Assembly (NCBI GenBank): GCA_002269645.1
Contig: NIVC01000769.1
Location: 1 to 64,000 of the forward strand
Source of the DNA: Macrostomum lignano
Lineage: Eukaryota
DNA length: 64,000 nt
Direction: 5' to 3'
The notes beneath the pieces were generated by a model. That model ran no database searches. It was not told where the DNA came from and worked only from the letters and a program-made list of their open reading frames with translations. The translations under genes and the position numbers were made by a program. The first letter of the stretch is position 1; each line of letters begins with the position of its first letter. Positions 3,835 through 62,227 of the stretch are shown here, in pieces.

Positions 3835-3909
3835 TTAAATAAAGAGCAAATACATGTACAATTAAATAAGTAAAACCCCAAAAATATGACAAAAAATGAA
3901 CCTCCAGAA

Positions 3910-4576: not shown

Positions 4577-6016
4577 CATATAAATACGGTCATGAATAAT
4601 TAAGAGCCTGGAGTGTTTTTAGGTAGTCATTTTTGGCAGTCAAATTGTCCGCAGTCAAATTTACCGCCGTCAAATTGTCGGCAGTCATTTTGCCCGCAGT
4701 CAAATCGTCTGCAACGTACGGCCGGTTTACATGTCCTAAACGACAGGACTCAAATAACGGGAGCACTTTATGGGTAAGAACCAGGAAGTCTGACGATTAT
4801 CAAACAAAATTTGTTTACACAGTTTAGAGTCCCCAAGCTGGCCAGTCACGTGGTGCTCTCAAAGGCTTGCGCGAGTATTCTTGAGTTTGCACTCAGTAAC
4901 AATTGTAAAATGCATCCCGCCGATGCAAAATGGGATCAGAATTTTCTAGTCAGATATGGATTCCATTAATTAAGTGGCCTACACGCAGCATTGGGTTTTT
5001 TCGCCAAATTGGTGCTACATGATGACGTAACCCAGACCGCGTGAAAACACACGTGCAACCCTTGGCCTCTGGCGCTGAAAGGCCCTGTCCCCTAGACTTT
5101 GTCCGCCTCTGGATGGTGCGGTAGCTCCTGTTGCGGCCAAGATCCCATTATCTAGACAGCGGGCCCGGTGTTACACTTTAGACTATTCGGGGTTTCTTGT
5201 CTGGCCCGGATATCCGAACGCACTTACGATATCCGCCCGGATGCTGTGAAGCAAAAAACCTGCTTTGCTTCTCCTTCCCGGATATTTTGAGCTGCTTTGC
5301 AATGTCCGGGCACCTTGAGGTGTCTCTCACGACACTGCATGACTCTGCTATATCCGCCCCGGAGATTACAAGTAGGGGAAGTTGTCTTAGGACATCCGAC
5401 TGTAGGTTGAAAGGGGCGGAGTCTGCTGAGGTTGCAGAATCTGCTGAGACAAAGGTTTGCTTTAGGACATCCGGCTACTGATATCTGGGGTTAAGAATAG
5501 CAAAATTTAGAGATCACTTTCACGAAATAGAAAATAACTTTTTGCTACTTTTTCAATTGGCAAACATCTGTGCCATGCTTATGTTGTACCTGTGGTTGTC
5601 CTGATGTCCAGCGCAGTGACTTGGGCTCTCCGTCTTCTCACTCGGAAGCCTTCTTAACTCTTAGTAGCGTAGGTAGTGCTGCCACCAGTTCCTTCAGGTC
5701 TCGGCCTTCGATGAGGTGAGCTTCCCGTCGGAACGAAATAACGAAGTCAACGAACTCAGCACCGGGTGCAGATTTGCAGTTCAACGTACAAGGCGTCTCG
5801 TCAGCAGCACCTGCCGGGTTTGGTTGGTTCAGGGAGGGCTGAGTTAGCCTCTCGTAGGCTTGAGGTTGGACTTTAGTGGGGTCTCAGTCAGACCAGTACA
5901 AGCAGATTCAGTATACGCAAAGGGCACCTAGTTAGACACTGATGCACACGGGAGCTTAGTGGATGGATTCTCCGCAGATAAGAAGCCTCCTTGACGGAAA
6001 CAAGGGGAGAGGGGTC

Positions 6017-9800: not shown

Positions 9801-10004
9801 AGTCCCATTGTGGCCTGACTCTACCCTTTCGTCCACCTTCCACCTTTCCACCACCTTCAACCACAGACTCAGCACTCCATCACTTCTCGCAACGTGCCCA
9901 AATTTCCTTTCTGTAGGTCTGTAGGATCTGTAGGTCTGTAGGTCTTCATCTCGAAAGCTCTGAGCCGCTTTTCATCTTTTTTCCCATTGCCCAGCTCTCA
10001 CACG

Positions 10005-10200
10005 GGAGCACGAGAATTGCCCGCAGACGGATTCCCCGCTGAGATTTGCCCGTCGAGCTTTTCCAGCCGAGAATTGCCCTCCGAGATTTGCCCGCAAGTG
10101 AATTGCTCGCGAGCAAATTGCCCACCGAATTTTTTCCCGCCGAGGTTTGCCCGCAATGCTTCTTTTCCTGCAGCGCATTTAATCACGCGGCAGGTTTTGT
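10005..10200. repeat. Degenerate ~15-bp tandem array (foldback/MULE arm-like)
   Basis: Repeated GAGA(A/T)TTGCCC(G/T)C units. A similar short array (GCAGTCAAATTGTCC) lies at 4636-4712. Confidence 0.6.
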
Positions 10201-11270
10201 CTGCCATGCCTCCCTAATGCTTAGTAATTGTCTTAATAAAGAGATTTGACCCGATCAAAACGTTTCGATGGTAACTGCGTATCAAATGCATTTTTTCTTG
10301 TGGGTTTTCATTTCTATATAGAATACATGCAGGGGTACATCAGTGAGCTGCATTCATATGCCATGCCACTTAATTGTCCCCTAAATCTCTACAACTCTGA
10401 CAACCAATTCTAAGACCTTCCCACCAATATTTTGAAGACCATTTTAGTATATGGGTGATAGTCACAGATCGGAGTATGAGCGTACACTGGTGTATTATAG
10501 GCCGCAGTTAGATTAGTTTTTCGTTTCTGCCGTTCGGGACTTTCGCGCATGAACAATTTTGTTTATCGACCAGTAAGACCTAGGTAACTTTTAACTGCTT
10601 TAAAGAATAGCTACATGTGTACATGTATATCCAAGCAGAAAATATCAAAGCTCACAGCCCCCATATGCAGGTACCTTGAATTTATACAGCCTAGGTAAGT
10701 TTAAAATGCACAATTTACTTGGAAGTTGAGCAGCTCTGTTCACCAGTTTCAAGAAAAAAAAGATTTCAGAAAATTAATACTCTGCAAAAGTACTCGTCAT
10801 TTCAATCTCATTTCTGCTGGTCGCAAGTACATTTTTGTATCTTCACACCTGGACTAAAAACATCTAAACTACCCTTCTTATCTGAGCCACGAGACGTGCC
10901 AGACAAGCCATACCAGCATACTGCATGGACAAGTACGTACCATGTGAAGTTCATTCCTGCATTTTAAATTTATAGTTTGTCTTCGAATGTTTGAAAAGCT
11001 CGATATAATGCTTACATGTACACGCTTCGTCACTGCCAGTGTCTGCTGAAATCTGTCCACCGGTCCCATTCCTATTCTAAAAGCTCTTTCACTGGCTGCT
11101 TCAGTGGACAGCATAGGCTATGGCGATATCAGTTGGAAAGAGCTTGATAAGGTGGATTGAGCTTAATTAAACTGTGTCGCAAGTAGACCATATGGAACAA
11201 ATAGAATGCATGCTGCGTATGCATTTCCAAGGAGAAGCGGGCCAATCTGTGAGAAAAATAAGCGAGAGAA

Positions 11271-15528: not shown

Positions 15529-16570
15529 ACCTGTATAACTTTCGCCGACACATTTTCAGACAGATTTTCCGACACTTTTTTGCGACACTTAAAATGTTGC
15601 AAAAAGTGTCGGAAAAAGTGTCGCAACGGTTGGCTTTCGCTGACGCATTTTCAGACGGATCTTCCGACACATTTTACAACACTTAAAATGTCACAAAAAG
15701 TGTCGGAAAAAGTGTCGTAAAAGTTAACATTCGCCGACACATATTTTCCGACACCTAAATTAATGCTGCAGTGTCTGATGCTTTACTTCTGCCAACACAT
15801 CTTCCGACACTTAAAATGTCACTTCTTAGAGCGAGGTCATATACATATAGCTACATGTATGCACAAAGTATTTCGAAAAAGTTAGTATCCATAACGTTCG
15901 AAAATTTGGACATTAATTAGATCAAGCTTTTGATTCGGATTACTTTGGAGTGCCGTACTACGATTATCTGATATTCTGACTTCACTGGCATTTAGTATTA
16001 CGTATTTACTTAGTAATTATAGCTAGCATTTTTTTGTATTAATTTGACTGCAAATACATTTAACACTGAAAATATCATGCCCTCAATAACAATACATACT
16101 GTTTGTAATCAGAAAATGCCAACTATTACATGTACATATACATGTAATGTATATCAATTGATGCAACTAAATGATGCGCAACACTGCAGTCTGCTGCAGT
16201 ACCTTAACAAACATACATGAAGCTAACATGAATAGTACGAGCTACATGTACGATGTACATGACCTCGCTCTAAGAAGTGACATTTTAAGTGTCGGAAGAT
16301 GTGTTGGCAGAAGTAAAGCATCAGACACTGCAGCATTAATTTAGGTGTCGGAAAATATGTGTCGGCGAATGTTAACTTTTACGACACTTTTTCCGACACT
16401 TTTTGCGACATTTTAAGTGTCGTAAAATGTGTCGGAAGATCTGTCTGAAAATGTGTCGGCGAAAGTTAACCGTTGCGACACTTTTTCCGACACTTTTTGC
16501 AACATTTTAAGTGTCGCAAAAAAGTGTCGGAAAATCTGTCTGAAAATGTGTCGGCGAAAGTTATACAGGT
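15529..16570. mobile_element. Foldback/MULE-like non-autonomous DNA transposon
   Basis: 312-bp arms (15529-15840 / 16259-16570) made of CCGACAC subrepeats. Perfect 9-bp TSD CCTTTTTCA (15520-15528, 16571-16579). Confidence 0.9.
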
Positions 16571-27712: not shown

Positions 27713-29397
27713 GGGATAGCGACGTTTGCCAGCCGACGTTTGCCTGCGGGACGTTTGCCAGCCGACATTTGCCAGCCGACGTTTGCCAGCCGACGTTTGC
27801 CAGTGGGACGTTTGCCAGCCGAAGTTTGCCTGCCGGACGTTTGCCAGCCGACGTTTGCCTGCGGGACGTTTGCCAGCCGACATTTGCCAGCCGACGTTTG
27901 CCAGCCGACGTTTGCCAGCGGGACGTTTGCCAGCCGAAGTTTGCCTGCCGGACGTTTGCCTGCGGGACGTTTTCCAGCCGACGTTTGCCTGCCGGAAGTT
28001 TGCCAGATAAAATTTGCTAGCCAATATAAAGCGAGTCAGTGAAAAATTTGATACTGAAATATTCGCAGTTTAGCGGTTTGACAAAAACCGTTTTTACTCC
28101 AACTTTTTGACGGTTATTCGCATATATACAAGTTTGCAAGCAAAATATATAAATTTTGCAGTTCACCAGTCTAACGTCCAATATCTAGTTTAACAACGAT
28201 TTTGGCACAACATATCAAAAGATGAACATTGGGTTTGCCTCGTATGAAAGCAATAACAATTGTTGTGCGGAAAAGATGAAAACTTCCTATCTCCCTATGG
28301 CCTTCAAAACATTTTTCATAGATTTCGAGTGCTGCGTACTTCTACTTTAGTAGTCCTTGGCATGACTAAGCTTTGCATACGTAGTGTCTAGCGCTTGCTA
28401 TTCTACTAGCTTGCTACTGGCGGCTTGTCTGGCTATTCAGCTATATACATGTAGCTTACTATAAAAACGTACCGCATTCGACTCGTCTACACTACACATG
28501 TACGTTGAGATCGCGGTTTCCTTGCTTACTTGAGTAGTAATACAACAGCATTGGAATCAATTTGCTTACTTTTAGATCTCCCAATGAACTGAGAAATATA
28601 TGAGCCAGAATTACCGCTCAGCAGCTCTTTTTGTTTGCCTCATAACTTAATCGCTGGAGATTCCCGTTGTAATCTGCGCGTCTTCTTTCGCACATCAAAA
28701 ATCAAACACCTCAAACTGGGAAAAACGATACACAATTGTCAAAAGTAAACAATATTTTCACATTCAAAGAAAATCGTTGTTAAACTGGATATTAGATGTA
28801 AATCTATATAAATTGCATAATTTATATAGATTTTGCATAAATTTCATAATTTATAGATTTTGCTTTCAAACTTGTATATACATGTATGCAAATAACCGTC
28901 AAAAAGTTGGAGTAAAAACGGTTTTTGTCAAACCGCTAAACTGCGAATGTTTCAGTATCAAATTTTTCACTGACTGGCTTTATATTGGCTAGCAAATTTT
29001 GGCTGGCAAACTTCCGGCAGGCAAACGTCGGCTGGCAAACGTCGGCTGGCAAACGTCCGGCAGGCAAACGTCAGCTGGCAAATGTCGGCTGGCAAACGTC
29101 CGACTGGCAAACGTCCCGCTGGCAAACGTCGGCTGGCAAACGTCGGCTGGCAAACGTCGGCTGGCAAACGTCGGCTGGCAAACGTCCCGCAGGCAAACGT
29201 CCGGCAGGCAAACTTCGGCTGGCAAACGTCCCGCTGGCAAACGTCGGCTGGCAAACGTCGGCTGGCAAATGTCGGCTGGCAAACGTCCCGCAGGCAAACG
29301 TCGGCTGGCAAACGTCCCGCAGGCAAACGTCGGCTGGCAAACGTCCCGCAGGCAAACGTCGGCTGGCAAACGTCCCGCAGGCAAACGTCGTAGACCC
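27713..29397. mobile_element. MULE (Phantom/foldback-like) non-autonomous element with 15-bp satellite arms
   Basis: GGG...CCC termini, long inverted arms (27713-~28205 / ~28770-29397) starting with (CCGACGTTTGCCAG/TG)n arrays, perfect 9-bp TSD ATACCCGAC (27704-27712, 29398-29406). Confidence 0.92.
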
Positions 29398-36667: not shown

Positions 36668-39009
36668 CAGTGGCGCGTCCAAGGGGGGGCTAGGGGGGGC
36701 CTGGGCCCCCCAATTAAGCCATGGGCCCCCCTGTGGCCCCCCCCCAATTAAGCCACAGGCCCCCCTGTGGCCCACCCCCACTTTCAGTTTTTTTCACTTT
36801 GGATTTTCCAAAAAATAGTTTGAAAAACCATTTTTTTTCTTTTTTGCAATTTTAATTTTAGAAACAATAGTTTTTATACGAGCACTTGTAAGTTGTTGAA
36901 ACCTGTGGATCTTGAACCCATGGAATTCCAATCTCCGGAATTATTTTCGCACATATTCTAGAATTTGAAGTCATACTCAAACAAAAACTTGTTAATAGTT
37001 AGGATGGAGATGAACATAAAATGGAGTAAATTCATGTAAAATTAAGATTTGAGGCAAGCATTGATCTTGTTGGCTAGGATGCTGTGCAGAATATCAGGCA
37101 ATGTCGATCTAAAACATGTATTGGAAAAGTCAGGAAAACTCTGATCTCTGCCTCTCTCTACATGTACATCCCTCGGATCCTTTGAAACTTCTATCTTTGC
37201 TTCTGTTTCCTCTCTTTTCTCTCATCTTTCGTCTCTCCTGTCATCTCTTCTTTCCTCTTTCTTCTCTTCTCTCTCCCCTCTTCTTTTGTCTCTTCCCCTA
37301 CCTCTCTTCTCTCACGTCTTTTCTCTGATCCCTCCTTTCTCTTCTTTTATCTCTGCACTCTTATCTCTTCACATTTCTCTTTTTTCTTGCCTCTCTCTTC
37401 TCTCATCTCATCTCTTCCCTGTTCTTTCCTCTCTCCTCTTTCCTCACTTTTTTCTCTCTGCTCTCCTCTTTCCTCTTTCCCCTCTACTCTCATCTCTTCC
37501 CTTTCCTCTCTTTTCTCTCCTCTCTTCTCTTCTCTCTCATCTCTCTCATCTCAAATCTTCTCTCTTATTTCCTCTCTCCTCTCTCCTCTTACTTATCTCT
37601 CTGCTCTCCGCTCCCCATCTTTCTTCTCTCTACTTTCTCCCCTCTCCATTCTCTTCTTTCCTCTCCCCTCTCTCCCCTGTTGTCGATTCTCTCCCCTCTT
37701 CTCTCTTTACTCCACTTCTTTCTCCCTTTGTATCTCTTCTCTGCTCTTACACATTTTTCTTCTCCCTACTCTCTCCTCTCATCTCCATAATCTCTTCTCT
37801 GTCCTCTGTTCTCTCTACTCTCCCATCTCTTGTCTGTTTACTCTCGTCTCTGTTCTCTGTTCTCCTCTCTCTCTTCTGTCAACTTTAATCTCTTATATGT
37901 TCTCTCATGTCTTTCCCCTGTACTCTTTTATTTCCCGTCTTTGACTCCTCTCTTTCCTTTCTCCTCTCTTCTCTTCTCTTGTCTCTTCACTTCTCTCTCC
38001 ACTCTCCTCTCTCTTCTCTTTCATATCTCATTTCTTATTTCTCCTGTCATCTCTACCACCTTATCTCTTTTCTCTTAACTTTACTCTTTCGTCTCTCATA
38101 TTTCTTCTTTTATATCTGCTTGCTCTCTTATCTCTTCTCATTTCTCTCTGCTCTCCACTCTCTCCTCTCTCCCCTCTTCTCACTTCTCACTCTCCCATCT
38201 CTCAAAACTTCCCTCCTCTTCTCTCTCTCCTCACTTCTTTCTACTTCTCTGCTCTCATTTCTCATCTCTCCTATCTATCTCCTCTCTCCCTGATCTCTAA
38301 TCTGTACTATCCTTTTTAACATCTCTTCTCTCTTCTCTCTGCTTGCTTATCTCCACCCTTTCTAATCTCTCCCTTCTCCACTCTCATCTTTCTACTCTAT
38401 CCTATCTACTCTCTCCTCTCTCATCTCTACTCTCTTCTATCTGCTCTCTACTTTCTCCCATCTTTTCTCTCTTCTCTCATCTCTACTCTTTTCTATCTCC
38501 TCTCTTTATCCTTTATCCTATCTACTTCATCCTATCTACTCTCTCCTCTCTCATCTCATCTCTCTCATCTCTCCCTCTTCTCACCTCTACTCTCTCCTCC
38601 TATTTATCCCTCCCTACTCTCTCCCCTTTCCTCTCAGTAAAAATATATACTTTGCAGAGATTAGCCAATAATTAAATGAACCAACAGAGTTTTTTTTGAT
38701 GAGAATCTGCCAGGAAAAGTAAACTGTAAAGTTAAATGAATTTGTGTTTAGCTTTCTATTCAAAAATTTTCCAATTGCAAATCCTAAAAAGTGTTCTTGG
38801 GCAAAAAACATTTAGAATGTTAGTTAAATCAACTTAGCTATAGCATTCATTCTTTGCGAGATCTTTTTTGGATGTCATTTTTACTTTTCGGTAAAAATTA
38901 GCTTTTACAATAATTAAAAAACTCAATTCAAGATGCTGGCATTGCCCCTTCAGTTTTTACTGGGCCCTAACTAGGCCCCCCCATCCTGAAAACTCTGGAC
39001 GCGCCCCTG
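36668..39009. mobile_element. Non-autonomous hAT element carrying a long polypyrimidine tract
   Basis: CAG(T/G)GGCGCGTCCA TIRs, GGGCCCC subterminal motifs, perfect 8-bp TSD ATCACAGG (36660-36667, 39010-39017). Confidence 0.92.
37140..38635. repeat. ~1.5-kb CT-rich low-complexity tract
   Basis: Strongly pyrimidine-biased + strand, degenerate (CT)n/(CTCTT)n with scattered A. Confidence 0.95.
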
Positions 39010-50953: not shown

Positions 50954-53900
50954 ATGGACAGCATCTTGGAAGAGCAAACAGAGCCCGACATGCAACAACC
51001 CAAACAGCAGGTCGCACCGCCTGAAGCCCAGGATGGGACGCAAAGAGTGCTGCGGAAATCCAGCTGGGCCGCAGGCAAGCAAAGAATCCGGGTTAGCCGA
51101 CCAATATTCACGCAGTACAACTTCGATGCCCGCTACCAGTTTACGGAGCCCCAATCTGGCAATGGCATCCCGGGCGGGCAAGAGACCGGCCTCAGCTGGG
51201 GCGGTGAAAACAGCGGTGACAGTGGTCTTGGCGCTCGACTGCGCCGCCAACTACACAACCTCCGATGCAGCGGCGATTGTGCGCTCTCCAATGCTTTCCG
51301 CCTGCTGCCCTGTCTGGCCATTATGCGGGCTTATCGACCGCGCAGCGATCTGCTGCCAGACCTTGCAGCCGGACTGACGGTCGGCATCATGAACATCCCG
51401 CAGGGCATGGCCTATGCGCTGCTTGCTGGCCTTCCACCCGTGTGCGGCCTCTATCTGGGCTTCGTGCCTCTTTTAGTTTATTTTCTGTTTGGAACTTCCC
51501 GTCAGGTGCGTCGTTAGATACAAGTTCACTACCTAAACTGATTTGATTTGATTAAAACTTTTTGCTGGAGTAAACCTTGACTGCACTGACACCCTCACAG
51601 GTTAGCATGGGTACTTTTGCCATCGCCAGTCTCATGCTTGCTGAGTCGGTCTCCCGTTTAGCTGGTGGCGCTGGCCGCCCACCAGTTCCGGAGCTGCTGG
51701 ACATCCTCGGCCCGCCACCAGCAATGTACGGCCCTGATGATGCAAACGAGACAACCAGCGCAATGGGCAACCCGCTGGTTGGCGAGGCGAAGGCCTGGTA
51801 CCGCACGCAGGTGGCTTTGAGTGTTAGCTTACTGGCCGGTGTACTGCAAATTCTGCTGGGTCTAATGCGCTTCGGTTTCATTACACTTTATCTAAGCACG
51901 CCTCTGGTATCCGGATTCACCACGGGCGCAGCTCTGCATGTCCTCAGCTCACAGGTAAGCATTGTGACATAAGTTATGAAAACTCATCTAAGTACTCGTA
52001 GATTTTTTGCCTACATACCAGCAAGTCAACATTACGAATGGAATACAACAAGCTTTCTTAACTCTAAAATAATTTAGATCATGATGTGTCGAAGTTCCAG
52101 TAATTTTAGACTTCACCCGCAAGATATTTAGTTTGCAACAAGTAGTGCATCCTGACGCGTACATTTGATCTGATAGCCTACGACAAAGAATCTTAAAATG
52201 AGAAGTTTTATCACCAGGTGCCAGCCATCTTTGGTATCAAGGTACCTCGTCGCGAGAGCCATTTCGAGTTGGCCGTATTTTATGTCGATGTAGCCCGCCG
52301 CTTGGGCGAGACAAACCCTGTCAGCGTGCTGGTGTCGGCACTGTCTCTGGGCCTGCTTCTGTTGTTCCGATTGTTCCTCAGTGATCGTCTGCGCCGCTGC
52401 TGTCGCTTCCCGGTCCCAGTGGAGCTTCTGCTGGTGGTTGGAGCCACCGCGATTTCGCACCTGGCTAGTCTGGAGGCCAACTACGGTCTGCGCACGGTAG
52501 GCGTCATACCTAGCGGCATTTCTGCGCCGCGTCTGCCAAGCGTTCGTCTCTGGCCAGCACTTTTCCAGGACGCAGCGCTCCTGGCCGTGGTCATGTATGT
52601 GTGCACCTACTCTGTGTGCAAGATCTACGCCGAAAAGAATAATTACCAATTGGATGCCAACCAGGAGCTTTTTGCGTACGGCCTGGTAAACATCCTGGGG
52701 CCAGTGTTCGGCTGCTACTTTTCGGCTGGGTCGCTCAGCCGTTCGCAGGTAATATGAGGAAAGATTTTTGTGATTTTTTTCTATTGGAGCTGCTTCAAAA
52801 CTACCGGTAGTAAATCAAGTAAATATGTATGGCATGAGACTATTCGTTCATAAGTACCATTTGACTAATTTCTACTGCAGGTTCAAGCTGAACTGGGTGG
52901 CAGAACACAGCTGGCCAGCTTGGTGTCAGCCACGCTGATGCTATTTGTTCTACTGTTTCTGGGACCAATGTTCAGCCAGCTGCCCAATGCTGTTCTTGCC
53001 TGCATAATTGTAGTTGCGCTTAAAGGCCTTCTAATGCAGTTTACTGATGCGAAGCGCTTGTACCGCATCTCAAAGTTTGACTTCAGTATTTGGATGGTCT
53101 GCTTTGTAAGCGTTGTGGCGCTAAATGTCACTTATGGCCTGATGATCGGCTTTGCCTACAGCCTGTTGACTGTAGTTTGCCGCACTCAGTCACCTCGGGT
53201 GTCGATTTTGGGTCGTCTACCGTTGACTGACATCTACCAAGACTACCGCTACTATCAGTGCGCAGTTCAGGTTGTTTGCTAACTTAGAAAACTTTTTATT
53301 GAGTTGGTACGGGTCACCTTGGTATGGTATAGACTTGACTCAAACGATCTGGCAGTTAATCACTCAGCCCTGAGCTAGAATTAGCAACTTTATGGAGGAG
53401 GAAGGGAGAAAAAGAATTCGAAATTCGTGCTAGACGCTGAATAAAAAAGTCCAGTAACACACCCTGCACCACCAGGTCCCAGGCGTGGTAGTGTTCCGTT
53501 TCGACGGCGCTCTGTACTTTGCCAGTGTGGAGAATTTCCGCCGCAAGCTGGCCAAGCTGACAGGCTTTGATCCCAAGCTGTCCCGCGGCGAGGATGAGAG
53601 CCTGCACCACATCGTGCTAGATTGCTCAGGAGTCAACTATGTAGACAGTGTTGGCGCGCGGTTTTTGCAATCCCTGGCCGAAGAATACAAATTGGCGGGA
53701 GTTTGCATCTTGTTCGCCTGCTGCCCGCACCAGTTCCGCCGGATGCTGGAGCGCAGCGACTTTCCCGACCGTTCTGCCTGCGTCTACATCTCCGTCCACG
53801 ATGCTGTAGTGGGCGCGCTGGCCGACTACCCGGAGGTGCGCCGATGGGTCATCTCCGACGTGCGCAGCCGGAATAACAGCGTCGTGGAGCCTGGAGCCTC

Positions 53901-54054
53901 AGCAGTTGTGACTGGCATTCATAGCGCAGCGGATTCCAGTGCTGACGCTTTACGGGGGGAAACGGTGACAGGAGTCCAGCGTTTTGTCCGGGCCGGTGAC
54001 GAGGAAGCGCTGTCTTTGACAAGGAACAATGGAACCAGTGAAATTTCCTGCTGA
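50954..54054 (+). CDS. SLC26/SulP anion transporter (prestin/pendrin-like) with STAS domain, ~801 aa
   Basis: Exons 50954-51505, 51601-51954, 52218-52748, 52881-53270, 53476-54054 (GT-AG, phase 0). Motifs DLAAGLTVG...PQGMAYALLA, GTSRQVSMGTFA, SGFTTGAA, NQEL.AYG, GSLSRS; STAS FRFDGALYFAS and LDCSGVNYVDSVG. Confidence 0.95.
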
Positions 54055-54480
54055 AAGAAAGCTTTGCGGCCGATATCACTGGCAGTTGATATAATACCCA
54101 AACTGAGTTATATGATGTCTCGCTACCACAATAGAATTAACTTTCTCAGTCAAATAAAGCTATCGCTTTTCTAATCTTGTCAACAATTTATCAATAGATT
54201 AATGTTTTCTTTTTTATGTTGCGAAATATTATATTTAGGTCCCTTTTTAGGTAACTCTTCCCAATGGCCTTCTAAGTCCCTATGTTATTCTACTCTAATT
54301 TATCTCTGCTATAATTGGTATAATTATTGGTATAATTGGTATCACTGATTATTTTGTACATCAGTCTACGAGACACTATGCAATTTCAAAGCATGTAAGA
54401 GCTCATGAAATAATTTACGCTGATAGTTAATTCTGAATTAATCGGAACACAGTTCGAACTTGTTCTGAGATGAATCTCAG

Positions 54481-54675
54481 TTAATTTCATCCTAAAACTA
54501 CCGGTAATAATAATCGATAAAGATAAGAGCTTTTAATAGGTGACATTCTTATAGTGTACTACAAGCATTACTGGCTAAGTGCAACATCATTTCACTCAAT
54601 CAGTCTTTGTGGCACTTCTGTATGAAAGCAATAATATTCATTGTGCTCATTGTGTCACTCCTTGCGCTCATAATT
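54481..54675. repeat. 195-bp direct repeat, copy 1
   Basis: Identical by eye to 57861-58055. Confidence 0.95.
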
Positions 54676-55017
54676 GTGCTTTGTCAGGTCCTGAGCGCCG
54701 TTCAGCCGAAACCACAGTGAAAGCGAGCTGACGTGACCGCGAACGCTACTGTAGGCTCGCAGGCGCCTGCCCGCGAGGCCAGCCAGGTAGTTTAGCAGCG
54801 TGGACACAGTACACCCGGCGGGGTCGAGTCCCTTGGCTGAGCAGTACGCGCGCCAGGACCGCACGTGTGAGCTGATGGCGCTTTTCGAGCGGGCCGCGTA
54901 GGAGGAACCGAGTAGTTCACGGGCTCGGTGGCTGAGGTGGTCTGGCGCAGTCTGGCGACCTGAAAACGGAGAAAAGCGGATGTGGCAGCAGAAAGCGTGT
55001 GCCGGGAAAGCGAGCAA
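54676..55017 (-). pseudogene. Tyrosine recombinase N-terminal (SAM-like) domain, truncated at the insertion junction
   Basis: SYAARSKSAISSHVRSWRAYC...TLLNYLAGL...SSVRGHVSSLSLWFRLNGAQDLTK. The frame then runs into the flanking repeat and stops. The catalytic domain is absent. Confidence 0.85.
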
Positions 55018-56612
55018 TTGGTGAGACGCACCAATGAGCCATAAAAGCGCAGCAAAAAATTCAACAACTGACTGCCCTCGTGCAGCCGAGATGCGGCGTC
55101 AGCAAAAATATGAAACGGCCCTGGCACATGGTAAGCACGCAGCTGAATGTTCTGACGAATGCAAAGCAGCGCCACCGTCTGCAACAGCCTCAACACCAGA
55201 GGGCACTTGGAGACCACATTGTTGATAATACAGCACGCTCCCATATTATCGCAGTAGATGCACAGCCGACAGTTGTGCAGGCGGTCCCGCCACGACAGCA
55301 ACGCCATCAGAGGCATCACAGCCTCCTTGTAATTGATAGGCAGATCCCGAAAAACAGCATCCGCGTCGAGATCCCAATTAACGTAGCGCCAGTCACTCAC
55401 GCCCCCCGGCAACCGCAGCACGGCTGCGCCGCCCACCAGGCAGGCGTCCGACTCGATCGCGGCATCGAAGTCGCCATTGAACCAGAGAGTCTTCCACCTT
55501 TGAGCTAGCAGAGCACACTTCCACCAGCGCAGCTGACTACGCAGGGCCGCATCCACCTCATCTTGCTGACCGACGGCCAAATTGTTAGAGCGCGAAATCA
55601 GGTCCTGAAGAAAGGGGCGACCGCATTCGATCACCTGCGAAGCCCACACCAGCCTGCCGATGATCTGCTGTAAACTTTGCTTGCTGATGCGATCCTTGGC
55701 AGCAGCATCGTCCAGTTGCTCTAAAAGTTTCTCCACTTTCTCGTCTGAAAGCCGCTTCAGGCCCTTGACGGTGTCGAGCTCCACACCGAGAAACGTCATC
55801 CTTTGCGAAGGCCGCTGACACTTCGTCCAATTCACGGTGAAGCCCAGTCTGGTCATCAGCGACGTCAAAACATTAAAGAAGGCCTCGCACTCGTTTTGCA
55901 AACCGCAAAAGGCAAAATCGTCCAGATAGGCCTCAGTATTGACGAAGCCGCGGTGCACCATCATCAACTTGACCGCCTCGCTGAGATGATAGAAAGCCGT
56001 GACGGAAGCAGCAGCACCAAATGGCAGGCGCGTGTCCACCATGTAGGTGTCGCAAGCATCGCTACCTAGCCGAAACTTCAAACCGGTAAACTTTTGGTCG
56101 TCAGGATGGATCCCACATGAACGATAGGCTTCGCTTAGATCGACCTTGCACATAAAGTAATTCTTCTTAAGCCTCTTAGCAAAGTTCTGGACACAGGTGA
56201 AACGCAGTCTCTGCTCGCTCTCGTAAGCGGAGTTGACAGACTTCCCTTGCGGCCGGCTGCAGTCATGGATTAAGCGAACGCCACCGTTGGACTTCGGCAG
56301 CGCACCAAGGGCGCTGACTATGCGAGGTTTGTCACCAGCAGCACAGAGACGATAACGACCGAGACGAAGCTCATTAGCAATCTGACGCGCAACTCTGTCA
56401 TGGTGCTTAAAAACCGATGAGTAGTTTGCCACTTCAACCAGCTCGTTGCCATGCCTCTGACGATTGGTGATGCGAAAGCCACTAGCAACGCCATCAAGGA
56501 TAAAAGCCATCCGACCGGGCGGGAGATCCAGCTTGGACAACTCCGCCTGCCACTGGGCCAGATTGAGATCAGAGGATAAAACAGGAGGAATAAAATTCGC
56601 GCTATGATCGAG
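54792..56612 (-). CDS. Reverse transcriptase-RNase H (pol) of the Ngaro-like element
   Basis: Uninterrupted frame with RLIHDCS, KVDLSEAYR, RLPFG, YLDD, TFLGVELD. RNase H motifs IESDAC, INYKE, YCDN, ADAASR. Confidence 0.95.
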   Translation of the reverse strand, partial: LDHSANFIPPVLSSDLNLAQWQAELSKLDLPPGRMAFILDGVASGFRITNRQRHGNELVEVANYSSVFKHHDRVARQIANELRLGRYRLCAAGDKPRIVSALGALPKSNGGVRLIHDCSRPQGKSVNSAYESEQRLRFTCVQNFAKRLKKNYFMCKVDLSEAYRSCGIHPDDQKFTGLKFRLGSDACDTYMVDTRLPFGAAASVTAFYHLSEAVKLMMVHRGFVNTEAYLDDFAFCGLQNECEAFFNVLTSLMTRLGFTVNWTKCQRPSQRMTFLGVELDTVKGLKRLSDEKVEKLLEQLDDAAAKDRISKQSLQQIIGRLVWASQVIECGRPFLQDLISRSNNLAVGQQDEVDAALRSQLRWWKCALLAQRWKTLWFNGDFDAAIESDACLVGGAAVLRLPGGVSDWRYVNWDLDADAVFRDLPINYKEAVMPLMALLSWRDRLHNCRLCIYCDNMGACCIINNVVSKCPLVLRLLQTVALLCIRQNIQLRAYHVPGPFHIFADAASRLHEGSQLLNFLLRFYGSLVRLTNCSLSRHTLSAATSAFLRFQVARLRQTTSATEPVNYSVPPTRPARKAPSAHTCGPGARTAQPRDSTPPGVLCPRC

Positions 56613-57672
56613 TCAGTATTGCGGTTTCTCCTCACCGCTCGATTCGTCGCGGTGGAAGGCTGCCTCAGAGTGCGCCAGGCCGCATCTTCGGCAGCGATGC
56701 AGGAACCGACAGCTCTTGCGTTCGCACCCGCGTATCCTGTTGTAGTCGAAGCAAACCAGTTGATTGCGCTTCTGGGCACCACCCCCGATTGCTGCTTCTG
56801 GGGAGCCATGAGGTACGCCGCAACCAGACTCAGGTCCGAGCTGTGCGACTCCCACTTGCCATCAGTCGCTTGGCTGAGCCGGCACTCGTCATCAAATCTC
56901 ATGACACGGCTCTTGTCGAAGCCCAGGTCCAACAACTCGCCAATGCGTGCGGTGTACCTGAGATAGTCTCTGAGCTCTGCCACATCCAATCGACCATGCT
57001 GATCCAGTCTGACTAGACGCCCGTCAGTCAGCATCTGAAGCATCGCCTGCGCATTGCCTGTCACCCAATCGCCTAACGACAGCGCCTCGACCGCCACTTC
57101 TTTAGACTTACTCTGGCCTAGAAGACACTGCTTGCGCTTGCTGACGAAGTCAACGATTCGGTAGACGCTACTGGTACTTCTCCCTGAGGCTCCCATGTTC
57201 TCATGCTGCTGCCCAACTTCATGCTGCACACATCCAGTTAGGCAATTTAGCAACTCACCCGGTACATCACGTGCCTCAGAACGGCCGACCCGTAGCTGCG
57301 CGAACTCGGATTCCAGCTGCGCTTCTTCTTTGCGCAGCTTCAGCAGACGGATTCGCTTCTCCGCCTCCAGCAGCTGTTCGTCCAGGCCGCCAGCCGCGCC
57401 AGACCCACCGTTCTCGACCTGTCGCCGATTTGGGGGGCTGCCCCGCTGCTCGCTACCGCCGAGTTCTGCCCTGTAGCTCGCAGAATGGCCTGAACGTTCG
57501 TCAGCTCGTCACTCTCGACAGAGGTCTCCACGTCTTGAATATGGGCGCGAAGCCTTTGGACTAGTTTTGCTTTGTTGCCAGAGGTTGGCAAACCAAGCTC
57601 CTTTAGTTTCCCTCGCAGTGCTGGCACAGTTGTGGGGACGGAATCGGCTGACTGGCTACGGGTGCGGTTCAT
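56613..57672 (-). CDS. Gag-like protein: N-terminal SAP domain, coiled coil, C-terminal Cys/His finger (two 1-nt frameshifts)
   Basis: SAP-like TVPALRGKLKELGLPTSGNKAKLVQRLRAH; C-terminal CFDYNRIRGCERKSCRFLHRCRRCGLAH. Adding one base in the C6 run (~57432-57437) and the G5 run (~56782-56786) joins the three ORF pieces. Confidence 0.8.
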
Positions 57673-57860
57673 GACTCAGCAAAAGTTTCTATTTCTAAGT
57701 CAAAAAAATTCACTGCGAGAAGGCAAAGTGAGCCGCCAGTAGAGCGCGACGGGGGTTTAAAAACACCCCTGCCACCCAAAGGGGGGGCAGGCGGCGATGT
57801 ACAACCAACGCGCTGGGCACTAAAGCCGGTTTGTGCACTTTCGCCGCACAAACCAGTCCA

Positions 57861-58055
57861 TTAATTTCATCCTAAAACTACCGGTAATAATAATCGATAA
57901 AGATAAGAGCTTTTAATAGGTGACATTCTTATAGTGTACTACAAGCATTACTGGCTAAGTGCAACATCATTTCACTCAATCAGTCTTTGTGGCACTTCTG
58001 TATGAAAGCAATAATATTCATTGTGCTCATTGTGTCACTCCTTGCGCTCATAATT
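57861..58055. repeat. 195-bp direct repeat, copy 2
   Basis: Identical by eye to 54481-54675. Confidence 0.95.
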
Positions 58056-59120
58056 CAACGCTTCGAAACAATTTTTGAACTAATACAACATTCATGAGAC
58101 AATGTTTCTGTGAGTATGGTTTGCTTCTGGATAATAAATAATTTTAACAACTCGTGAAAAAATCATTGTCTAACTCTAGAATCATAAATAGACACAATCA
58201 ACCATTATATTCGATATATTCATTGGTATGCGAGCATACTACGTCATACTAACTACACAGCATCATATTAGTCATAGTAGCTCATGACTAACTAACTGTG
58301 ACTAGTTCACTCTGAATTTATCAAATCAAATTCATAACCGCAGTCACAATACTGCAGTCAATTTTCAAGAGGCCGTAAGCCGCTGCACAAGATAGGAGTG
58401 TCCAAAGTTCAGGCAAATTAGAAACACTGAGCCGCATGAAGTGTCCTTTTATTTCAGTAGCTACTGCAGTCAGGTCTTTCACATTTCTTCTCTCCCCTCC
58501 GTGCCCTGCCCAGTCAGTGTAACTCTAGCAAAAGTCAGCGAGGAGAAGGATTGTGCTGCCGTGAGTGTACAATGAAGACCTGCGCACTCGTACAGTACGC
58601 ACTCGAGTCAACTTTGCTCCGTTCCCCTGTCGTCTGTTTGCCAAAGCTTTAAAAAGACCAGAGCACTCCGATACAAGAAACCGCTGCGCCTTTTGAAATC
58701 AACCTTATTTGTTTTATTCGCAAGCTCGGCTTAACAGCAGGTCAGTTGGAGCTAGTTTTTTCATTTAATCAAACAAAATTTTATAAACAACTTACTTGCC
58801 TCTCATAAAAATGGAATTTTTACTTTTGAAATCCTAGACTGATGTTAATCATAAAGAACCAAAATTTACGCAGCAGAAAATGGAGTTGTATCCATCTAAC
58901 TTGAGAAAGTTTCTGAAATGTGGTTATTAGTTCTCCAAAAACCTTACTTCTGCCATCATCACTACGCTCCGTTTTCTATCTTTAATCAATTGTGATTGCA
59001 ATGCAGCTCAATAGTCGGGTTTTTAATGCTTAAATGTCTATTGCCACCGAGTGCGCTCAAAATCGACTATAGACTGTAGAGGTAAAACTTTCCCGTCACA
59101 TGCTCTCTCATGTTCTAATA

Positions 59121-59296
59121 TACCTTTTTGCGATCTAGTTTGCCAAAACTGCAATCAAATTTGCCCGCGGAAAAATATCACTTATAATTTTGCTTTCTAG
59201 GCCAAGTCTGCTCATAGGAGACAGCAAAATTATAAGTGATATTTTTCCGCGGGCAAAATTGATTGCAGTTTTAGCAAACTAGATCGCAAAAAGGTA
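59121..59296. mobile_element. 176-bp Tc1/mariner MITE related to the element at 26677
   Basis: ~74-bp inverted arms, TA TSDs (59119-20, 59297-98). Terminus TACCTTTTTGCGATCTAGTTTGCCAAAACTGC closely matches 26677 onward. Confidence 0.88.
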
Positions 59297-59524
59297 TAAC
59301 TTTGTAACTTTGGCGGCTCATTTGGGCTTACTCGCATCATTGAATTAATCCAAGATGTTTGCCGAAGTAATGGAGCTTTTGTCTATGGTACATGTAGCAC
59401 AGAAGCATTTAATTTGGTTCAAAAACATCAATTTGGTCCTTATATTCTATAGGTTCTTCTATAGGTATGCAGCAAAACATAGAATTTTTTGTGTCTCGCC
59501 AACAGCTTTGGTGACTGCATCGTG

Positions 59525-62227
59525 ATGTCAGCATCGCTTACTCTTTTCGGCGTGGCCGCCATCGCTGGCGCAGTCGTTTGGTTGCTGCGACGCGTCTTCT
59601 TTGGCAGCGGCAGCCGGACGCCGAGCCCGTTCCTGCCGCCATCACAGCTTCCGGCGCGGTCGGCAGTGGAAACGCGCCAGTCTGTTCGGGACGAATCGCT
59701 AAAGCGGGGCTTCTCCCCGGCCCGGGTGCCTGCGAATCTGGATGCCATTGTGATCGGATCCGGTATTGGTGGCCTGTCAGCGGCCGCCCTCCTAGCCCGG
59801 GCCGGCCGTCGGGTGCTGGTGCTGGAGCAGCACGACGTGGCCGGCGGCTGCTGCCACACGTTTTGGGAGCGCGGCTACGAGTTTGACGTTGGCATTCACT
59901 ACATTGGAGAGATGGCTCCCGGTTCAGACATGCGAGCTCTGGTCGACCAGGTGAGTGGCTGTGTATGCGAGAGTTGTGTTCAAAGGTGCCAATCTTACTA
60001 ATTATGTACGAGTATAAATAACCATTGTCAGGAGGGTTGTGGGTACCCTGGCGCAGCGACAGCAGTCAGCAGTTATCGAGGATCAGCGACATCCTCGTAC
60101 ATTCTGCCCATTTAGTACAGTAGTACAAGTACATTAGGACATTAGTATACAAGCTTGCTGTACGCAGGCATGCAATCATACGAGCTATTGATATGTCGTT
60201 GATATACGAGCGTACCTGAAATTGACAATTTTCTTCTTCTTCTCACTGTTAATCTGACGGGTATGCAGTGCGCAGTTTTGAGTGATTTTTTCTTAGCTCT
60301 AGCAAGTCAAGGTGCATTTTTCCCCAGAACCCAGACAGACTGTCTTCTCTTTTTCCACAGTTGACAGCGACTTGAGTTCAAGCGATCAATTAGAAATATG
60401 AGGGGATTCTTGTCGGAAATGTCGCTGCATTTTGAGCATAGCAACTCGTACCGCTCGCACCACCGCGCAGATAACGGACGGCCAGCTAGACTGGGCCCCG
60501 CTGGACCCCGACTGCTACGACGCCATCATGATCGGTGACGACGAGACCAAGCGAGTCTACAATGTCAGCGCTGACCGGAGAAAGTTCATCGGCCTCTTGT
60601 GCGAGAAATTTCCCAATGATGTGGACGCAATAAAAAAATTCTTCAATTTCGCAGACTCGTTACGCAAGGGCTCGGAACCTTACTGGGGTCTGAAGTTCCT
60701 GCCGCTAACATTGAGCAGGCTGCTCGCCAGGTCCGGCCTACTAAAGTACTTCTTCCCCATCTTCAGGTTTGTTGTACTTTTATATTGCTTTATTTAATCC
60801 CTTGTTTACGAGTTCTTTCTCCGAGCGAATGTGAATGGTCAGAAAAAGTCTAATACTTGTTTCTTTAGCATCAAATTTTTTATTGAATTCTGACTGATGC
60901 AGTAGATTTGATTTTACCTCATGAATGTTGTGGCATCTAGTCACACCCCACTGTTTTATGGTTCTGTTTCTTTCAACTAATACCTAGGAAACTTTCGTCT
61001 TCGCTGGAAGTTGTGGTAAGGATGTTAAAGTAATATTGCAGCCATGGAGCTTGACCGCTTATCTCCCTCTATCCCTGAATTTGCAGGCACCTAGACGAAA
61101 GCATCGATTCGCACCTGTCCCAGCTGACTGACAACCAGGAACTTCGCGCAGTTCTGAGCTACTGCTATGGCGACTACGGAACCCAGCCCAGCAAGGCCTC
61201 GGTTGTCATGCAGGCCTGGCTATTCAATCATTTCCAAGGTGCCGGTGCGTTCTACCCTGTAGGCGGTGCCAGCGAGATCGCCTACACCATCCTGCCAGTC
61301 ATTCGCCGCACAGGTGGCGAGGTCCTCGTTCGGGCGCGCGTCACCCAGTTGCTGGGCAACCCAAGCACCGGTGCTATCGAGGGCGTCGTTGTCAACGGCA
61401 AATCGGAGGTCCGTGCACCGCTGGTGATATCGGCAGTCGGGCTAAACAACACGGCAGCCATCATGCCGCCTGGCATTTCCGCGGGCCGCCTTCCCGGACT
61501 TCTGAATGACATGCCGATTGGAGTGGCCGCCATGTCGGTGTTTGTCGGCCTCAAGCTGCCCACCGATCGGCCAGTCGAGTCGCTCGGCCTGCGCCGTCAA
61601 AATGTGTGGCGATTCACTGATCCCAACCTGGACAAGTCCGTGTCCGAGTACCTGGCCTTGGACCCGCAGGAGGCCGCTGCCTCAGATGCCCCGCTGATGT
61701 TTGTGTCATTTCCCTCGCTGAAGGACCCGACGTGGGCGAAGCGGGCGGCTCTGGACCGTCTCACCTGTGCCCTGGTGACGCTCACCAACTGGGACTGGTT
61801 CGCTGACTGGTCCGACGCGAGAGTGAAGCACCGCGGTGCTGACTATGAGGGTCTGAAAGGCGCCATCGGTCGCCGCCTGTGGGAGCAGACTAAGGCCATC
61901 TTCCCGCAGCTGGCTGATCTGGAGGTTGAGGCCTTTGAGGTTGGCTCTCCCGTGACTAATAACTTCTACATCGGCTCGCGCCGCGGCGAAATCTACGGCC
62001 TTGACCATGGACTCGCCCGCACCTCTGCCGATGGCTGCGCCCGCCTCCGCCCCGACATTGGCGTGCCCGGTCTCCTGTGCTCCGGCCAAGACGTTGCCAG
62101 CTGCGGCTTTGTCGGCGGCCTTGTGGGCGGCCTGCTGTGCGCCTCGGATGCTTTGGGCAGAAACCTCTTCTTCGACCTGGCCGCTCAGGTGCGGCAGGAG
62201 AGGCGAAGGGCCAAGCAGATGGATTAA
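59525..62227 (+). CDS. RETSAT: All-trans-retinol 13,14-reductase (retinol saturase; phytoene desaturase family), ~620 aa
   Basis: Exons 59525-59950, 60471-60766, 61087-62227. N-terminal membrane anchor, DAIVIGSGIGGL Rossmann motif, LEQHDVAGGCCHTF, FDVGIHYIG, YPVGGASEIA, GEIYGLDH, GQD. Confidence 0.93.

What the first reader, a model, noticed from the sequence alone, without database searches (positions are those of the whole stretch)
54481..58055. Truncated Ngaro/DIRS retroelement inserted between two perfect 195-bp direct repeats
Seen: 54481-54675 equals 57861-58055 and exactly brackets a 3185-bp element. The element seems to keep its 5' leader but is cut inside the YR ORF, has no poly(A), and lacks its catalytic recombinase. 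Known: DIRS-order elements integrate by tyrosine recombination and normally make no TSD; unusually long TSDs are reported for some non-LTR elements such as RTE-clade Rte-1. Inference: this copy was inserted by a non-native route, such as trans-mobilisation by a long-TSD LINE machinery, templated repair of a widely staggered break, or recombination of a circle carrying the 195 bp. A short hairpin (CTGAGATGAATCTCAG, 54465-54480) abuts the left junction.
Basis: partly seen in the sequence, partly recalled or inferred. Interest (0 to 1): 0.8.

Follow-up and report, generated by a model that had tools for sequence, protein, structure and literature searches.

The report
Broken Ngaro retrotransposon between duplicated flanks
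A young, 3'-truncated copy of a Ngaro-type (tyrosine-recombinase) retrotransposon sits between two identical 195-bp copies of AT-rich DNA in an animal genome. It most likely arrived by normal integration and was later cut down by break repair, so it is an unusual rearranged copy rather than a new way of transposing.

Summary
54481-54675 and 57861-58055 are identical over 195 bp and bracket a 3185-bp GC-rich insert. On the minus strand the insert reads: 188-nt leader, gag (SAP motif, CCCH finger, two frameshifts), an intact RT/RNase H ORF, and the first 114 codons of a Cre-like tyrosine recombinase (YR). It then stops dead, with no catalytic domain and no poly(A).

Relatives with 35-66% identical RT carry gag-RT/RH-YR. 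Four relatives on long contigs show all or part of the Ngaro split repeats A1-[ORFs]-B1-A2-B2. So "truncated Ngaro" is right.

The "non-native insertion" reading is only partly supported. The leader length (188 nt) fits the A1-start-to-ATG distance of relatives. The flank touching the 5' end ends in TTAA, which copies the ...TTTAA end of relatives' B repeat, as other 5' flanks do. So the 5' junction looks recombinase-made, and only junction 54675|54676 is aberrant.

Best model (confidence about 0.5): normal integration at 54480|54481, followed by repair against the empty homologue. This copied 195 bp of flank and end-joined it into the YR gene.

Rivals are one-step capture at a staggered break, LINE-mediated insertion, the 195-mer being the element's own B repeat, and misassembly. 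No empty allele or second family copy could be retrieved. Interest is modest.

The parts
54465..54480 (.). 16-bp palindrome CTGAGATGAATCTCAG, immediately left of the left 195-bp copy and next to the inferred original integration point 54480|54481
   Evidence: 7-bp stem, 2-nt loop. Base rate is 1.1 per kb in this window, so the adjacency is only suggestive.
54481..54675 (.). Left copy of the 195-bp direct repeat (X), 34% GC, continuous with the left flank. Interpreted as flank DNA copied from an empty allele.
54676..57860 (-). 3185-bp 3'-truncated Ngaro-type retrotransposon copy (leader/A1, gag, RT/RNase H, N-terminal part of YR)
54676..55017 (-). First 114 codons of the tyrosine recombinase ORF (N-terminal, core-binding-type domain). 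It ends '...DLTKH' at the aberrant junction 54675|54676, and all catalytic residues are missing.
   Evidence: The ORF3 profile of relatives matches Cre recombinase at E=3.5e-14.
54792..56540 (-). Intact 582-aa RT/RNase H ORF (YLDD motif; RNase H motifs up to about residue 505). There is no room for a methyltransferase domain before the YR frame.
56613..57672 (-). gag, split over three frames: ATG at 57672 with a SAP-like motif (57672-57340), a middle part, and a CCCH finger (56855-56613). Frameshift 2 is at 56786-56792, on a 5-base homopolymer run (window 56782-56786). Frameshift 1 lies somewhere in 57341-57508, an interval that contains a 6-base homopolymer run (window 57432-57437).
   Evidence: Relatives L001 and L003 have a single gag ORF.
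57673..57860 (-). 188-nt 5' leader, interpreted as a complete A1 repeat. It has a 10-bp-stem hairpin at nt 7-33 and a CCCC..GGGG hairpin followed by a TATA-like TTTTTAAA at about nt 95-102.
57861..58055 (.). Right copy of the 195-bp repeat (X), the original flank. Its first four bases, TTAA, abut the element's 5' end.
50954..54054 (+). Context: exons of a SulP/SLC26 anion transporter gene. The last (STAS) exon ends with a stop at 54052-54054 and AATAAA lies at 54153, so the insertion is about 430 bp downstream of the stop and probably intergenic.
59489..62227 (+). Context: exons of a retinol saturase (RETSAT)-like gene downstream. The best database hits are only 45-49% identical (named hits include Saccoglossus and Branchiostoma), so the host is a metazoan with no close relative in the database.

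Best explanation
This is a two-step history with a single aberrant junction. Step 1 (inferred): a full-length Ngaro element integrated in the normal way. Its tyrosine recombinase recombined a circular DNA copy with the chromosome, without target duplication, at a TTAA between 54480 and 54481, in minus orientation. The element's 3' part (YR catalytic domain, B1-A2-B2) then lay next to the left flank L, and its 5' end (A1) lay next to the 195-bp segment X. Step 2 (inferred): while the insertion was heterozygous, a break in or near the element's 3' part was repaired using the empty homologue (L-X-R). The L end copied, or was joined to, 195 bp of X. The product was then end-joined, without visible microhomology, to the remaining element inside the YR gene (junction 54675|54676). 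The result is L-X-[YR-N..RT..gag..A1]-X-R, which is exactly what is seen. Aborted synthesis-dependent strand annealing, a replicative template switch between homologues, non-homologous joining between a broken empty and a broken filled homologue, and re-integration of an excised circle [X+element part] by homologous recombination all give the same product. Sequence alone cannot separate them. What is shown: the anatomy, the truncation point, the perfect duplication, and a 5' junction of canonical appearance. What is inferred: the order of events and the involvement of an empty allele.
For: The 195-bp duplication is perfect and unique in the window. The element is Ngaro-like: gag-RT/RH-YR order, no methyltransferase, and relatives with split direct repeats. 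The truncation is inside the YR ORF, where relatives continue. The 5' end looks native: the leader is 188 nt against 197 (L008), about 184 (L002), 84 (L009), 76 (L010), 307 (L014) and 378 (L011). Relatives' B repeats end ...ATTTAA or ...ATTTAG, and the 5' flanks of integrated copies partly mimic that end: L004 TTAc, L009 ATTT, L002 TTAA. The window flank ends AAATTAA, and TTAA occurs at 0.78% of local intergenic positions. A1 in the window and in relatives carries a CCCC..GGGG hairpin and a TATA-like box well inside the repeat. RNA would therefore lack the first 100 nt or so that are present here (this is inference). With a native 5' junction, only one junction needs a non-canonical origin. 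Aborted SDSA finished by end joining is an established outcome of break repair at transposon sites (PMC8951532). DIRS-order integration normally leaves no target duplication (PMC3266345).
Against: No empty allele, no full-length allele at this site and no second copy of this family could be retrieved. The closest RT is 66% identical, and the host genome is absent from the searchable collections. The nativeness of the 5' end therefore rests on relatives with 37-57% identical RT. The short motifs shared between the window and L002/L008 5' ends (TGGA; GCACAAA(A)CCG) are not significant in a shuffle test. Leader lengths in relatives vary widely: 76-378 nt, and 1074 nt in L004. The model needs two events and heterozygosity. 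The 195-mer also resembles a Ngaro B repeat in size, AT content, a poly(A)-signal-like ATTAAA 57 nt from its end, and its terminal TTAA.
Confidence: 0.5

Rival explanations
1. One-step, recombinase-independent insertion. A Ngaro DNA or cDNA fragment was captured at a chromosomal break with ends staggered by 195 nt (fill-in plus end joining), or was copied in by a replicative template switch from another genomic copy. The 195-bp target duplication arose in the same event.
For: Exact bracketing by a perfect duplication. The 3' end is arbitrary, with no poly(A). The gag frameshifts would fit copying from a defective genomic copy. A palindrome lies at one edge of the duplicated segment.
Against: It needs two non-canonical junctions and an unusually wide stagger. 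A random fragment would hit the native A1 start only by chance, yet the leader length and the TTAA flank look canonical. Circular intermediates have no free end at the A1 start.
Confidence: 0.12
2. Trans-mobilisation of a Ngaro RNA by a LINE, through target-primed reverse transcription with an exceptionally long target-site duplication.
For: A target duplication is present. L1 duplications are said to range up to several hundred nt (PMC1291365, citing others). The orientation is geometrically compatible with priming from ...CATAATT-3' at 54675.
Against: The copy is 3'-truncated and 5'-complete, the opposite of the usual LINE signature. There is no poly(A), microsatellite or LINE 3' tail. Relatives' sequence after the breakpoint (GTG.../GCC...) gives no complementarity to the primer end. 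RTE duplications are mostly 7-15 bp, and RTE mobilisation needs a shared 3' end (PMC6007223). The insert includes the promoter-like part of A1, which should be absent from the RNA (inference).
Confidence: 0.04
3. The 195-mer is not host DNA but the element's own B repeat. The structure would be B-A-gag-RT-(YR deleted)-B, a rearranged, permuted or non-autonomous derivative, and the empty site would be L|R.
For: Relatives' B repeats are 169-256 nt and AT-rich: 32-38% GC in L008 and L009 against about 51-53% for the element body. They carry AATAAA 36-57 nt from the B end (about 105 nt in L004), end in ATTTAA or ATTTAG, and abut the A start. In element sense the 195-mer is 34% GC, has ATTAAA 57 nt from its end, ends AAATTAA and abuts A1. 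The Logan contigs of the two closest relatives end 55 and 83 nt past the window's truncation point, which might reflect YR-deleted derivatives.
Against: In 5 of 5 full-length relatives A1 is preceded by host DNA, not by B. Every native arrangement containing B-A-ORFs-B also has a second A upstream, and none exists in the window. It requires the host|B boundary and the internal deletion endpoint to fall on the same nucleotide. There is no significant similarity to any relative's B. AT-richness equals that of the host flanks.
Confidence: 0.1
4. Assembly artefact, for example a chimeric read, or a mis-join of the empty and filled haplotypes at a heterozygous full-length insertion.
For: The duplication is perfect. 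gag frameshift 2 sits on a homopolymer run, and the interval of frameshift 1 contains one, as residual long-read errors would. A heterozygous insertion is exactly the situation in which haplotype mis-joins occur.
Against: There are no Ns or gaps in the window. There is no sequence overlap between the end of X and the YR region that could drive a false join. The structure is clean at single-base level, with an otherwise intact 582-aa RT ORF.
Confidence: 0.12

Closest known systems
Ngaro retrotransposons (DIRS order), e.g. those described in zebrafish, sea urchin, cnidarians and Cafeteria burkhardae (PMC8547959, PMC4157794)
   Same: gag-RT/RNase H-YR gene order. No methyltransferase domain. GC-rich body. 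Relatives on long contigs have A1-[ORFs]-B1-A2-B2 split direct repeats. ORF3 of relatives is Cre-like.
   Different: This copy lacks the YR catalytic domain and the whole B1-A2-B2 end. gag is frameshifted, and the copy is flanked by a 195-bp duplication, whereas Ngaro/DIRS integration normally makes none. Relatives here have a 62-339-nt spacer between A2 and B2.
DIRS1-like and PAT-like elements (PMC3266345)
   Same: Tyrosine-recombinase retroelements thought to integrate from a circular intermediate without target duplication.
   Different: DIRS1 and PAT encode a methyltransferase domain. DIRS1 has inverted terminal repeats and an overlapping YR ORF. None of this is seen here.
Aborted-SDSA / end-joining repair products at transposon sites, as in the Drosophila P{wa} assay (PMC8951532)
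   Same: A partly deleted element with a stretch of newly copied template sequence, joined by end joining at an arbitrary internal point.
   Different: In the fly assay the break is made by transposase and the template is usually the sister chromatid carrying the element. Here the template must have been an empty homologue, and the cause of the break is unknown.
LINE-mediated retrocopies with long target-site duplications
   Same: A direct duplication of target DNA flanks a retro-derived insert.
   Different: There is no poly(A) or LINE tail, the truncation is 3' rather than 5', and the duplication is about ten times the usual length (PMC6007223).

Membership tests
Ngaro (DIRS order) | RT/RNase H homologous to those of YR-encoding retroelements | tested here: met
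   219 hits, best 66% identity. Fetched relatives (L004, L005, L008-L011, L014) all carry gag-RT-ORF3. YLDD and RNase H motifs are present.
Ngaro (DIRS order) | Tyrosine recombinase ORF directly downstream of RT/RNase H, same strand | tested here: met
   The 114-codon remnant aligns with the N-terminus of ORF3 in L001, L003, L004, L009 and L010. The ORF3 profile matches Cre over its full length at E=3.5e-14. L005 ORF3 carries PF00589 (weak).
Ngaro (DIRS order) | Intact catalytic YR residues (R...HxxR...Y), i.e. an autonomous copy | tested here: not met
   The copy ends before the first catalytic Arg, and no remnant lies elsewhere in the window. This bears on autonomy, not on ancestry: it is a defective derivative.
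Ngaro (DIRS order) | No methyltransferase domain between RNase H and YR (distinguishes Ngaro/VIPER from DIRS1/PAT; PMC3266345, PMC4157794) | tested here: met
   The RNase H motifs end at about residue 505 of the 582-aa ORF, and the ORF's tail overlaps the start of the YR frame.
Ngaro (DIRS order) | Split direct repeats A1-[ORFs]-B1A2B2 | not testable with these tools
   The 3' end is missing from this copy and there are no internal repeats. The feature is met in L004, L008 and L009; in L014 only the A1/A2 repeat was detected by the self-comparison and its B repeat was read from the sequence. No copy of the same family was available.
Ngaro (DIRS order) | Integration without target-site duplication | tested here: inconclusive
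   The copy is flanked by a 195-bp duplication. I interpret this as secondary, but the empty allele could not be obtained.
LINE-mediated (TPRT) retrocopy | 3' poly(A)/microsatellite or LINE 3' tail at the insert's 3' end | tested here: not met
   The sense 3' end is ...GACCTGACAAAGCAC, followed directly by the 195-mer.
LINE-mediated (TPRT) retrocopy | Intact 3' end with variable 5' truncation | tested here: not met
   The opposite polarity is seen: the 5' leader is present and the 3' third is missing.
LINE-mediated (TPRT) retrocopy | Target-site duplication of typical length (about 7-20 bp) | tested here: not met
   195 bp. Typical ranges are from PMC6007223.
LTR retrotransposon with 195-bp LTRs | TG...CA LTR termini, 4-6-bp target duplication, tRNA primer-binding site next to the 5' LTR | tested here: not met
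   The repeat starts TTAATT and ends CATAATT. The flanks (...CTCAG / CAACG...) do not match each other, and no PBS-like sequence follows.

The most novel reading that the evidence does not exclude
A DIRS-order (Ngaro) element copy was inserted without its own tyrosine recombinase, through a break-repair or target-primed route that duplicated 195 bp of target. This would be a second, recombinase-independent way for YR retroelements to enter chromosomes.
Probability: 0.15. Interest if true: 0.6.

Novelty: new member of a known kind. Interest (0 to 1): 0.3.

Why it matters
If the two-step reading is right, the locus is a clean natural example of how a fresh retroelement insertion is partly erased by repair against the empty homologue. 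It leaves a truncated copy and a flank duplication that mimics a giant target-site duplication. That matters for annotation pipelines, which would misread it as an insertion signature. It also adds a new, apparently recently active Ngaro family, with an intact RT and a perfect duplication, in a poorly sampled metazoan lineage. It hints at a TTAA/TTTAA-like integration preference shared by a Ngaro clade. If the one-step reading were right, it would show recombinase-independent integration of a DIRS-order element, which has not been documented in the papers I could read.

Tried and rejected
1. Search for the empty allele or the host genome. The STAS-exon ORF next to the insertion gave no hit. 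The RETSAT exon gave at most 49% identity, and the RT at most 66%. The host is therefore not in the searchable collections.
2. 5' ends of the closest relatives. L001 and L003 start only 38-39 nt before the gag ATG. The L002 leader does not align significantly with the window's.
3. Similarity between the 195-mer and relatives' B repeats or downstream regions. None is significant, whereas L008 B against L009 B is.
4. Rfam on 53.5-59.5 kb. Nothing in the element or the 195-mer; only sub-threshold miRNA-like hits to the 59119-59298 hairpin.
5. LTR-element reading of the 195-bp repeats. Rejected: no TG/CA termini, no short target duplication, no primer-binding site.
6. Composition as proof that the 195-mer is host DNA. 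Rejected as an argument once relatives' B repeats turned out to be equally AT-rich.
7. The idea that roughly 3-kb Logan contigs define a natural gag-RT unit. L006 and L007 did not follow the pattern.
8. It could not be confirmed in the papers read; SR3, an RTE-clade element, has 10-12-bp duplications.
Full report
**Observation**

The two 195-bp segments 54481-54675 and 57861-58055 are identical at every base, with a start-to-start spacing of 3380. The bases just outside the two copies differ, so the repeat is exactly 195 bp. Neither the 195-mer nor the 3185-bp insert (54676-57860) recurs in the 64-kb window. The insert is 56.5% GC. The 195-mer is 34% GC and the adjacent 400 bp on each side are 32-35% GC. 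The palindrome CTGAGATGAATCTCAG at 54465-54480 exists, but palindromes of that quality occur 71 times in the window, about 1.1 per kb. The window has no Ns.

**Anatomy of the insert (sense strand is the minus strand)**

- **Leader.** 57860-57673 is a 188-nt leader. It has a 10-bp-stem hairpin near its start and a CCCC..GGGG hairpin followed by a TATA-like TTTTTAAA.
- **gag.** gag starts at ATG 57672 with a SAP-like motif and ends with a CCCH-type finger. Relatives L001 and L003 encode gag as one ORF, but here it is spread over three frames.
  - The second frameshift lies at 56786-56792, exactly on a run of five G in the sense strand.
  - The first lies somewhere in 57341-57508, an interval that contains a run of six C in the sense strand.
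  - Both are compatible with single-base deletions. They could be real slippage mutations or residual long-read errors.
- **RT/RNase H.** The ORF at 56540-54792 (582 aa) is intact, with YLDD and RNase H motifs up to about residue 505.
- **YR remnant.** A third frame (55017-54676) encodes 114 residues that align with the N-terminal domain of ORF3 of relatives. It ends '...DLTKH' at the last base of the insert. L001, L002 and L003 continue from that point ('VLTGHLLRG.KR...'). Complete relatives place the catalytic Arg, HxxR and Tyr further downstream.
- A profile of relatives' ORF3 matches Cre recombinase over its whole length, E=3.5e-14.
- No catalytic remnant exists anywhere in the window, and there is no poly(A) at the 3' end.

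**Classification**

- The RT ORF has 219 homologues. The closest is 66% identical and comes from a Logan assembly.
- Relatives on longer contigs have gag-RT/RH-YR. Four of them show all or part of the Ngaro repeat pattern:
  - L008: A1 5629-5812, B1 9444-9699, A2 9698-9881, B2 9975-10230.
  - L009: A1 5739-5899, B1 9553-9733, A2 9734-9894, B2 9957-10137.
  - L004: A1 3701-3916, B1 8541-8709, A2 8706-8921, B2 9261-9429.
  - L014: A1 5382-5650, A2 9795-10063; its B repeat was seen only by eye in the sequence, not in the self-comparison.
- This is the A1-[ORFs]-B1A2B2 structure that defines Ngaro (PMC8547959), here with a 62-339-nt spacer before B2 where B2 was located (L004, L008, L009).
- There is no space for a methyltransferase domain, which separates Ngaro from DIRS1 and PAT (PMC3266345, PMC4157794).
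- The copy is therefore a defective, 3'-truncated Ngaro. It lacks about 220 codons of YR plus B1-A2-B2.

**Context**

- The insert lies about 430 bp downstream of the stop codon of a SulP/SLC26 gene. The gene's exons match TIGR00815, the last exon is the STAS domain, and an AATAAA lies 98 nt after the stop.
- It lies 1.4 kb upstream of a RETSAT-like gene.
- The best RETSAT hits are 45-49% identical, and the named hits include Saccoglossus and Branchiostoma. The host is therefore a metazoan with no close relative in the searchable data.

**Is the 5' end native?**

This question separates the models.

- The distance from A1 start to the gag ATG in relatives is 197 nt (L008), 84 (L009), 76 (L010), 307 (L014), 378 (L011) and 1074 (L004). 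In L002, the closest relative with a 5' flank, it is about 184 nt if its A1 starts at the TGGAATTAAC motif it shares with L008. The window has 188 nt.
- In L004, L008 and L009 the B repeat ends ...ATTTAA, and in L014 ...ATTTAG. The circle-junction-like B1|A2 reads TTTAA|ATGGAATTAAC in L008 and TTTAA|GGGGTATTAAAC in L009.
- The host flank next to A1 partly mimics the B end (L004 ..TTAc, L009 ..ATTT, L002 ..TTAA). This is expected if integration crosses over in a short stretch shared by the circle junction and the target (model from PMC3266345).
- In the window the flank next to the 5' end reads ...GAAATTAA|TGGACTGG. TTAA occupies only 0.78% of positions in the local intergenic DNA.
- The short motifs shared by the first 40-60 nt of the window, L002 and L008 are not significant in a shuffle test. 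I give them no weight.
- Overall I put the probability that 57860 is the true A1 terminus at roughly 0.6-0.7.

**Why a native 5' end matters**

In the accepted model, the A1 start is never a free DNA end. The RNA starts inside A1, and the DNA intermediate is a circle. A1 becomes joined to host DNA only by the recombinase. A native A1|host junction therefore argues that this copy arrived canonically. That leaves one aberrant junction, 54675|54676.

The simplest way to obtain L-X-[YR-N...A1]-X-R with one aberrant junction is to join an empty allele (L-X, ending 195 bp past the integration point) to a filled allele broken inside the YR gene. Four routes give this product:

- Aborted synthesis-dependent strand annealing on the empty homologue followed by end joining, a documented repair outcome at transposon sites (PMC8951532).
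- A template switch between homologues.
- Direct end joining of two breaks.

A new insertion is heterozygous by definition, so an empty template is available. The junction shows no inserted bases. Judged from relatives' sequence after the breakpoint, it shows no microhomology either (weak inference). The perfect identity of the two X copies dates the second event as recent.

**Rivals**

(a) *One-step capture at a break staggered by 195 nt, or a replicative template switch from another genomic copy.* This is possible. It needs two non-canonical junctions, and the 5' breakpoint must fall on the A1 terminus by chance.

(b) *LINE-mediated insertion.* The evidence is against it:
- The polarity of truncation is wrong, and there is no tail.
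- There is no primer complementarity.
- The promoter part of A1 is present.
- RTE-clade duplications are mostly 7-15 bp, and RTE mobilisation depends on a shared 3' end (PMC6007223).
- The statement that Rte-1 makes long duplications could not be verified.

(c) *The 195-mer is the element's own B repeat.* I take this seriously.
- For: relatives' B repeats are 169-256 nt and AT-rich, end in ATTTAA or ATTTAG next to the A start, and carry a poly(A) signal 36-57 nt from that end (about 105 nt in L004). In element sense the 195-mer is 34% GC, has ATTAAA 57 nt from its end and ends AAATTAA. Composition therefore cannot prove host origin.
- Against: no full-length relative has B upstream of A1 (5 of 5). 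Any native B-A-ORFs-B arrangement also needs a second A, which is absent. Two independent breakpoints would have to coincide at one base. There is no similarity to any B.

(d) *Misassembly.* It cannot be excluded without reads. The homopolymer-associated frameshifts suggest a long-read assembly. However, no sequence overlap exists that would drive such a false join.

**Unexplained**

The Logan contigs of the two closest relatives (L001 and L003, from the same run) both start 38-39 nt before the gag ATG. That fits a contig break at the A1 boundary. Both also end 55 and 83 nt beyond the window's truncation point. Two other Logan contigs do not show this pattern. It could be chance, an assembly-graph branch, or a hint that YR-deleted derivatives are common in this clade.

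**Verdict**

The element identification is correct. The 'non-native insertion' inference is only partly supported. The best explanation, at confidence about 0.5, is a canonical Ngaro insertion later truncated by repair against the empty allele, which produced a pseudo-target-site duplication. Novelty: a new, rearranged member of a known kind. Interest is about 0.3.

Noticed in passing
L004, L008, L009, L014 (B1|A2 junctions and B2 ends; e.g. L008 9690-9710 and 10222-10230): In four Ngaro relatives from different samples the B repeat ends in ATTTAA or ATTTAG. In L008 and L009 the B|A junction forms TTTAA-N6-TTAA(A), an inverted repeat around a 6-nt spacer that resembles a recombinase core site. 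5' flanks of integrated copies partly mimic the B end.
   Followed up: partly
L001 and L003 (whole contigs, Logan SRR31628392): The two closest relatives' contigs both begin 38-39 nt upstream of the gag ATG. Both end 55 and 83 nt beyond the point where the window copy is truncated. The cause is unknown.
   Followed up: partly
window 56782-56792 and 57432-57437: The second gag frameshift sits on a 5-base homopolymer run, and the interval holding the first frameshift contains a 6-base run. These may be residual long-read indel errors rather than real mutations.
   Followed up: partly
window 59119-59298: A near-perfect hairpin with 80-nt arms (96% complementary) and a 20-nt loop, about 190 bp upstream of the first RETSAT-like ORF. 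It gives only sub-threshold Rfam hits to miRNA precursor families.
   Followed up: no
window 1383-3601 (minus strand): Three consecutive GC-rich ORFs (166, 216 and 238 aa) include a CxxCxxxH zinc-knuckle-like motif. They look like the gag region of another, unrelated retroelement.
   Followed up: no
window 27720-28022 and 28987-29390: Two arrays of a 14-bp minisatellite (CGACGTTTGCCAGC, with higher-order periods of 29 and 115 bp) lie in inverted orientation about 1 kb apart.
   Followed up: no
window 15529-15846 and 16253-16570: A 318-bp inverted repeat (97.5% identical), itself built of 94-95-bp tandem units. It resembles a foldback or MITE-like element.
   Followed up: no
window 37211-38635: About 1.3 kb of strongly strand-asymmetric CT-rich low-complexity sequence, with GC skew about -0.66.
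   Followed up: no
L002 138-159 and 334-354: A 22-nt motif, TGTTCCCA(C/G)ACTTTTTT(T)CCAC, recurs at the same offset in the 196 nt upstream of the putative A1 start and within the leader. This suggests a diverged tandem duplication of the A region in that relative.
   Followed up: no
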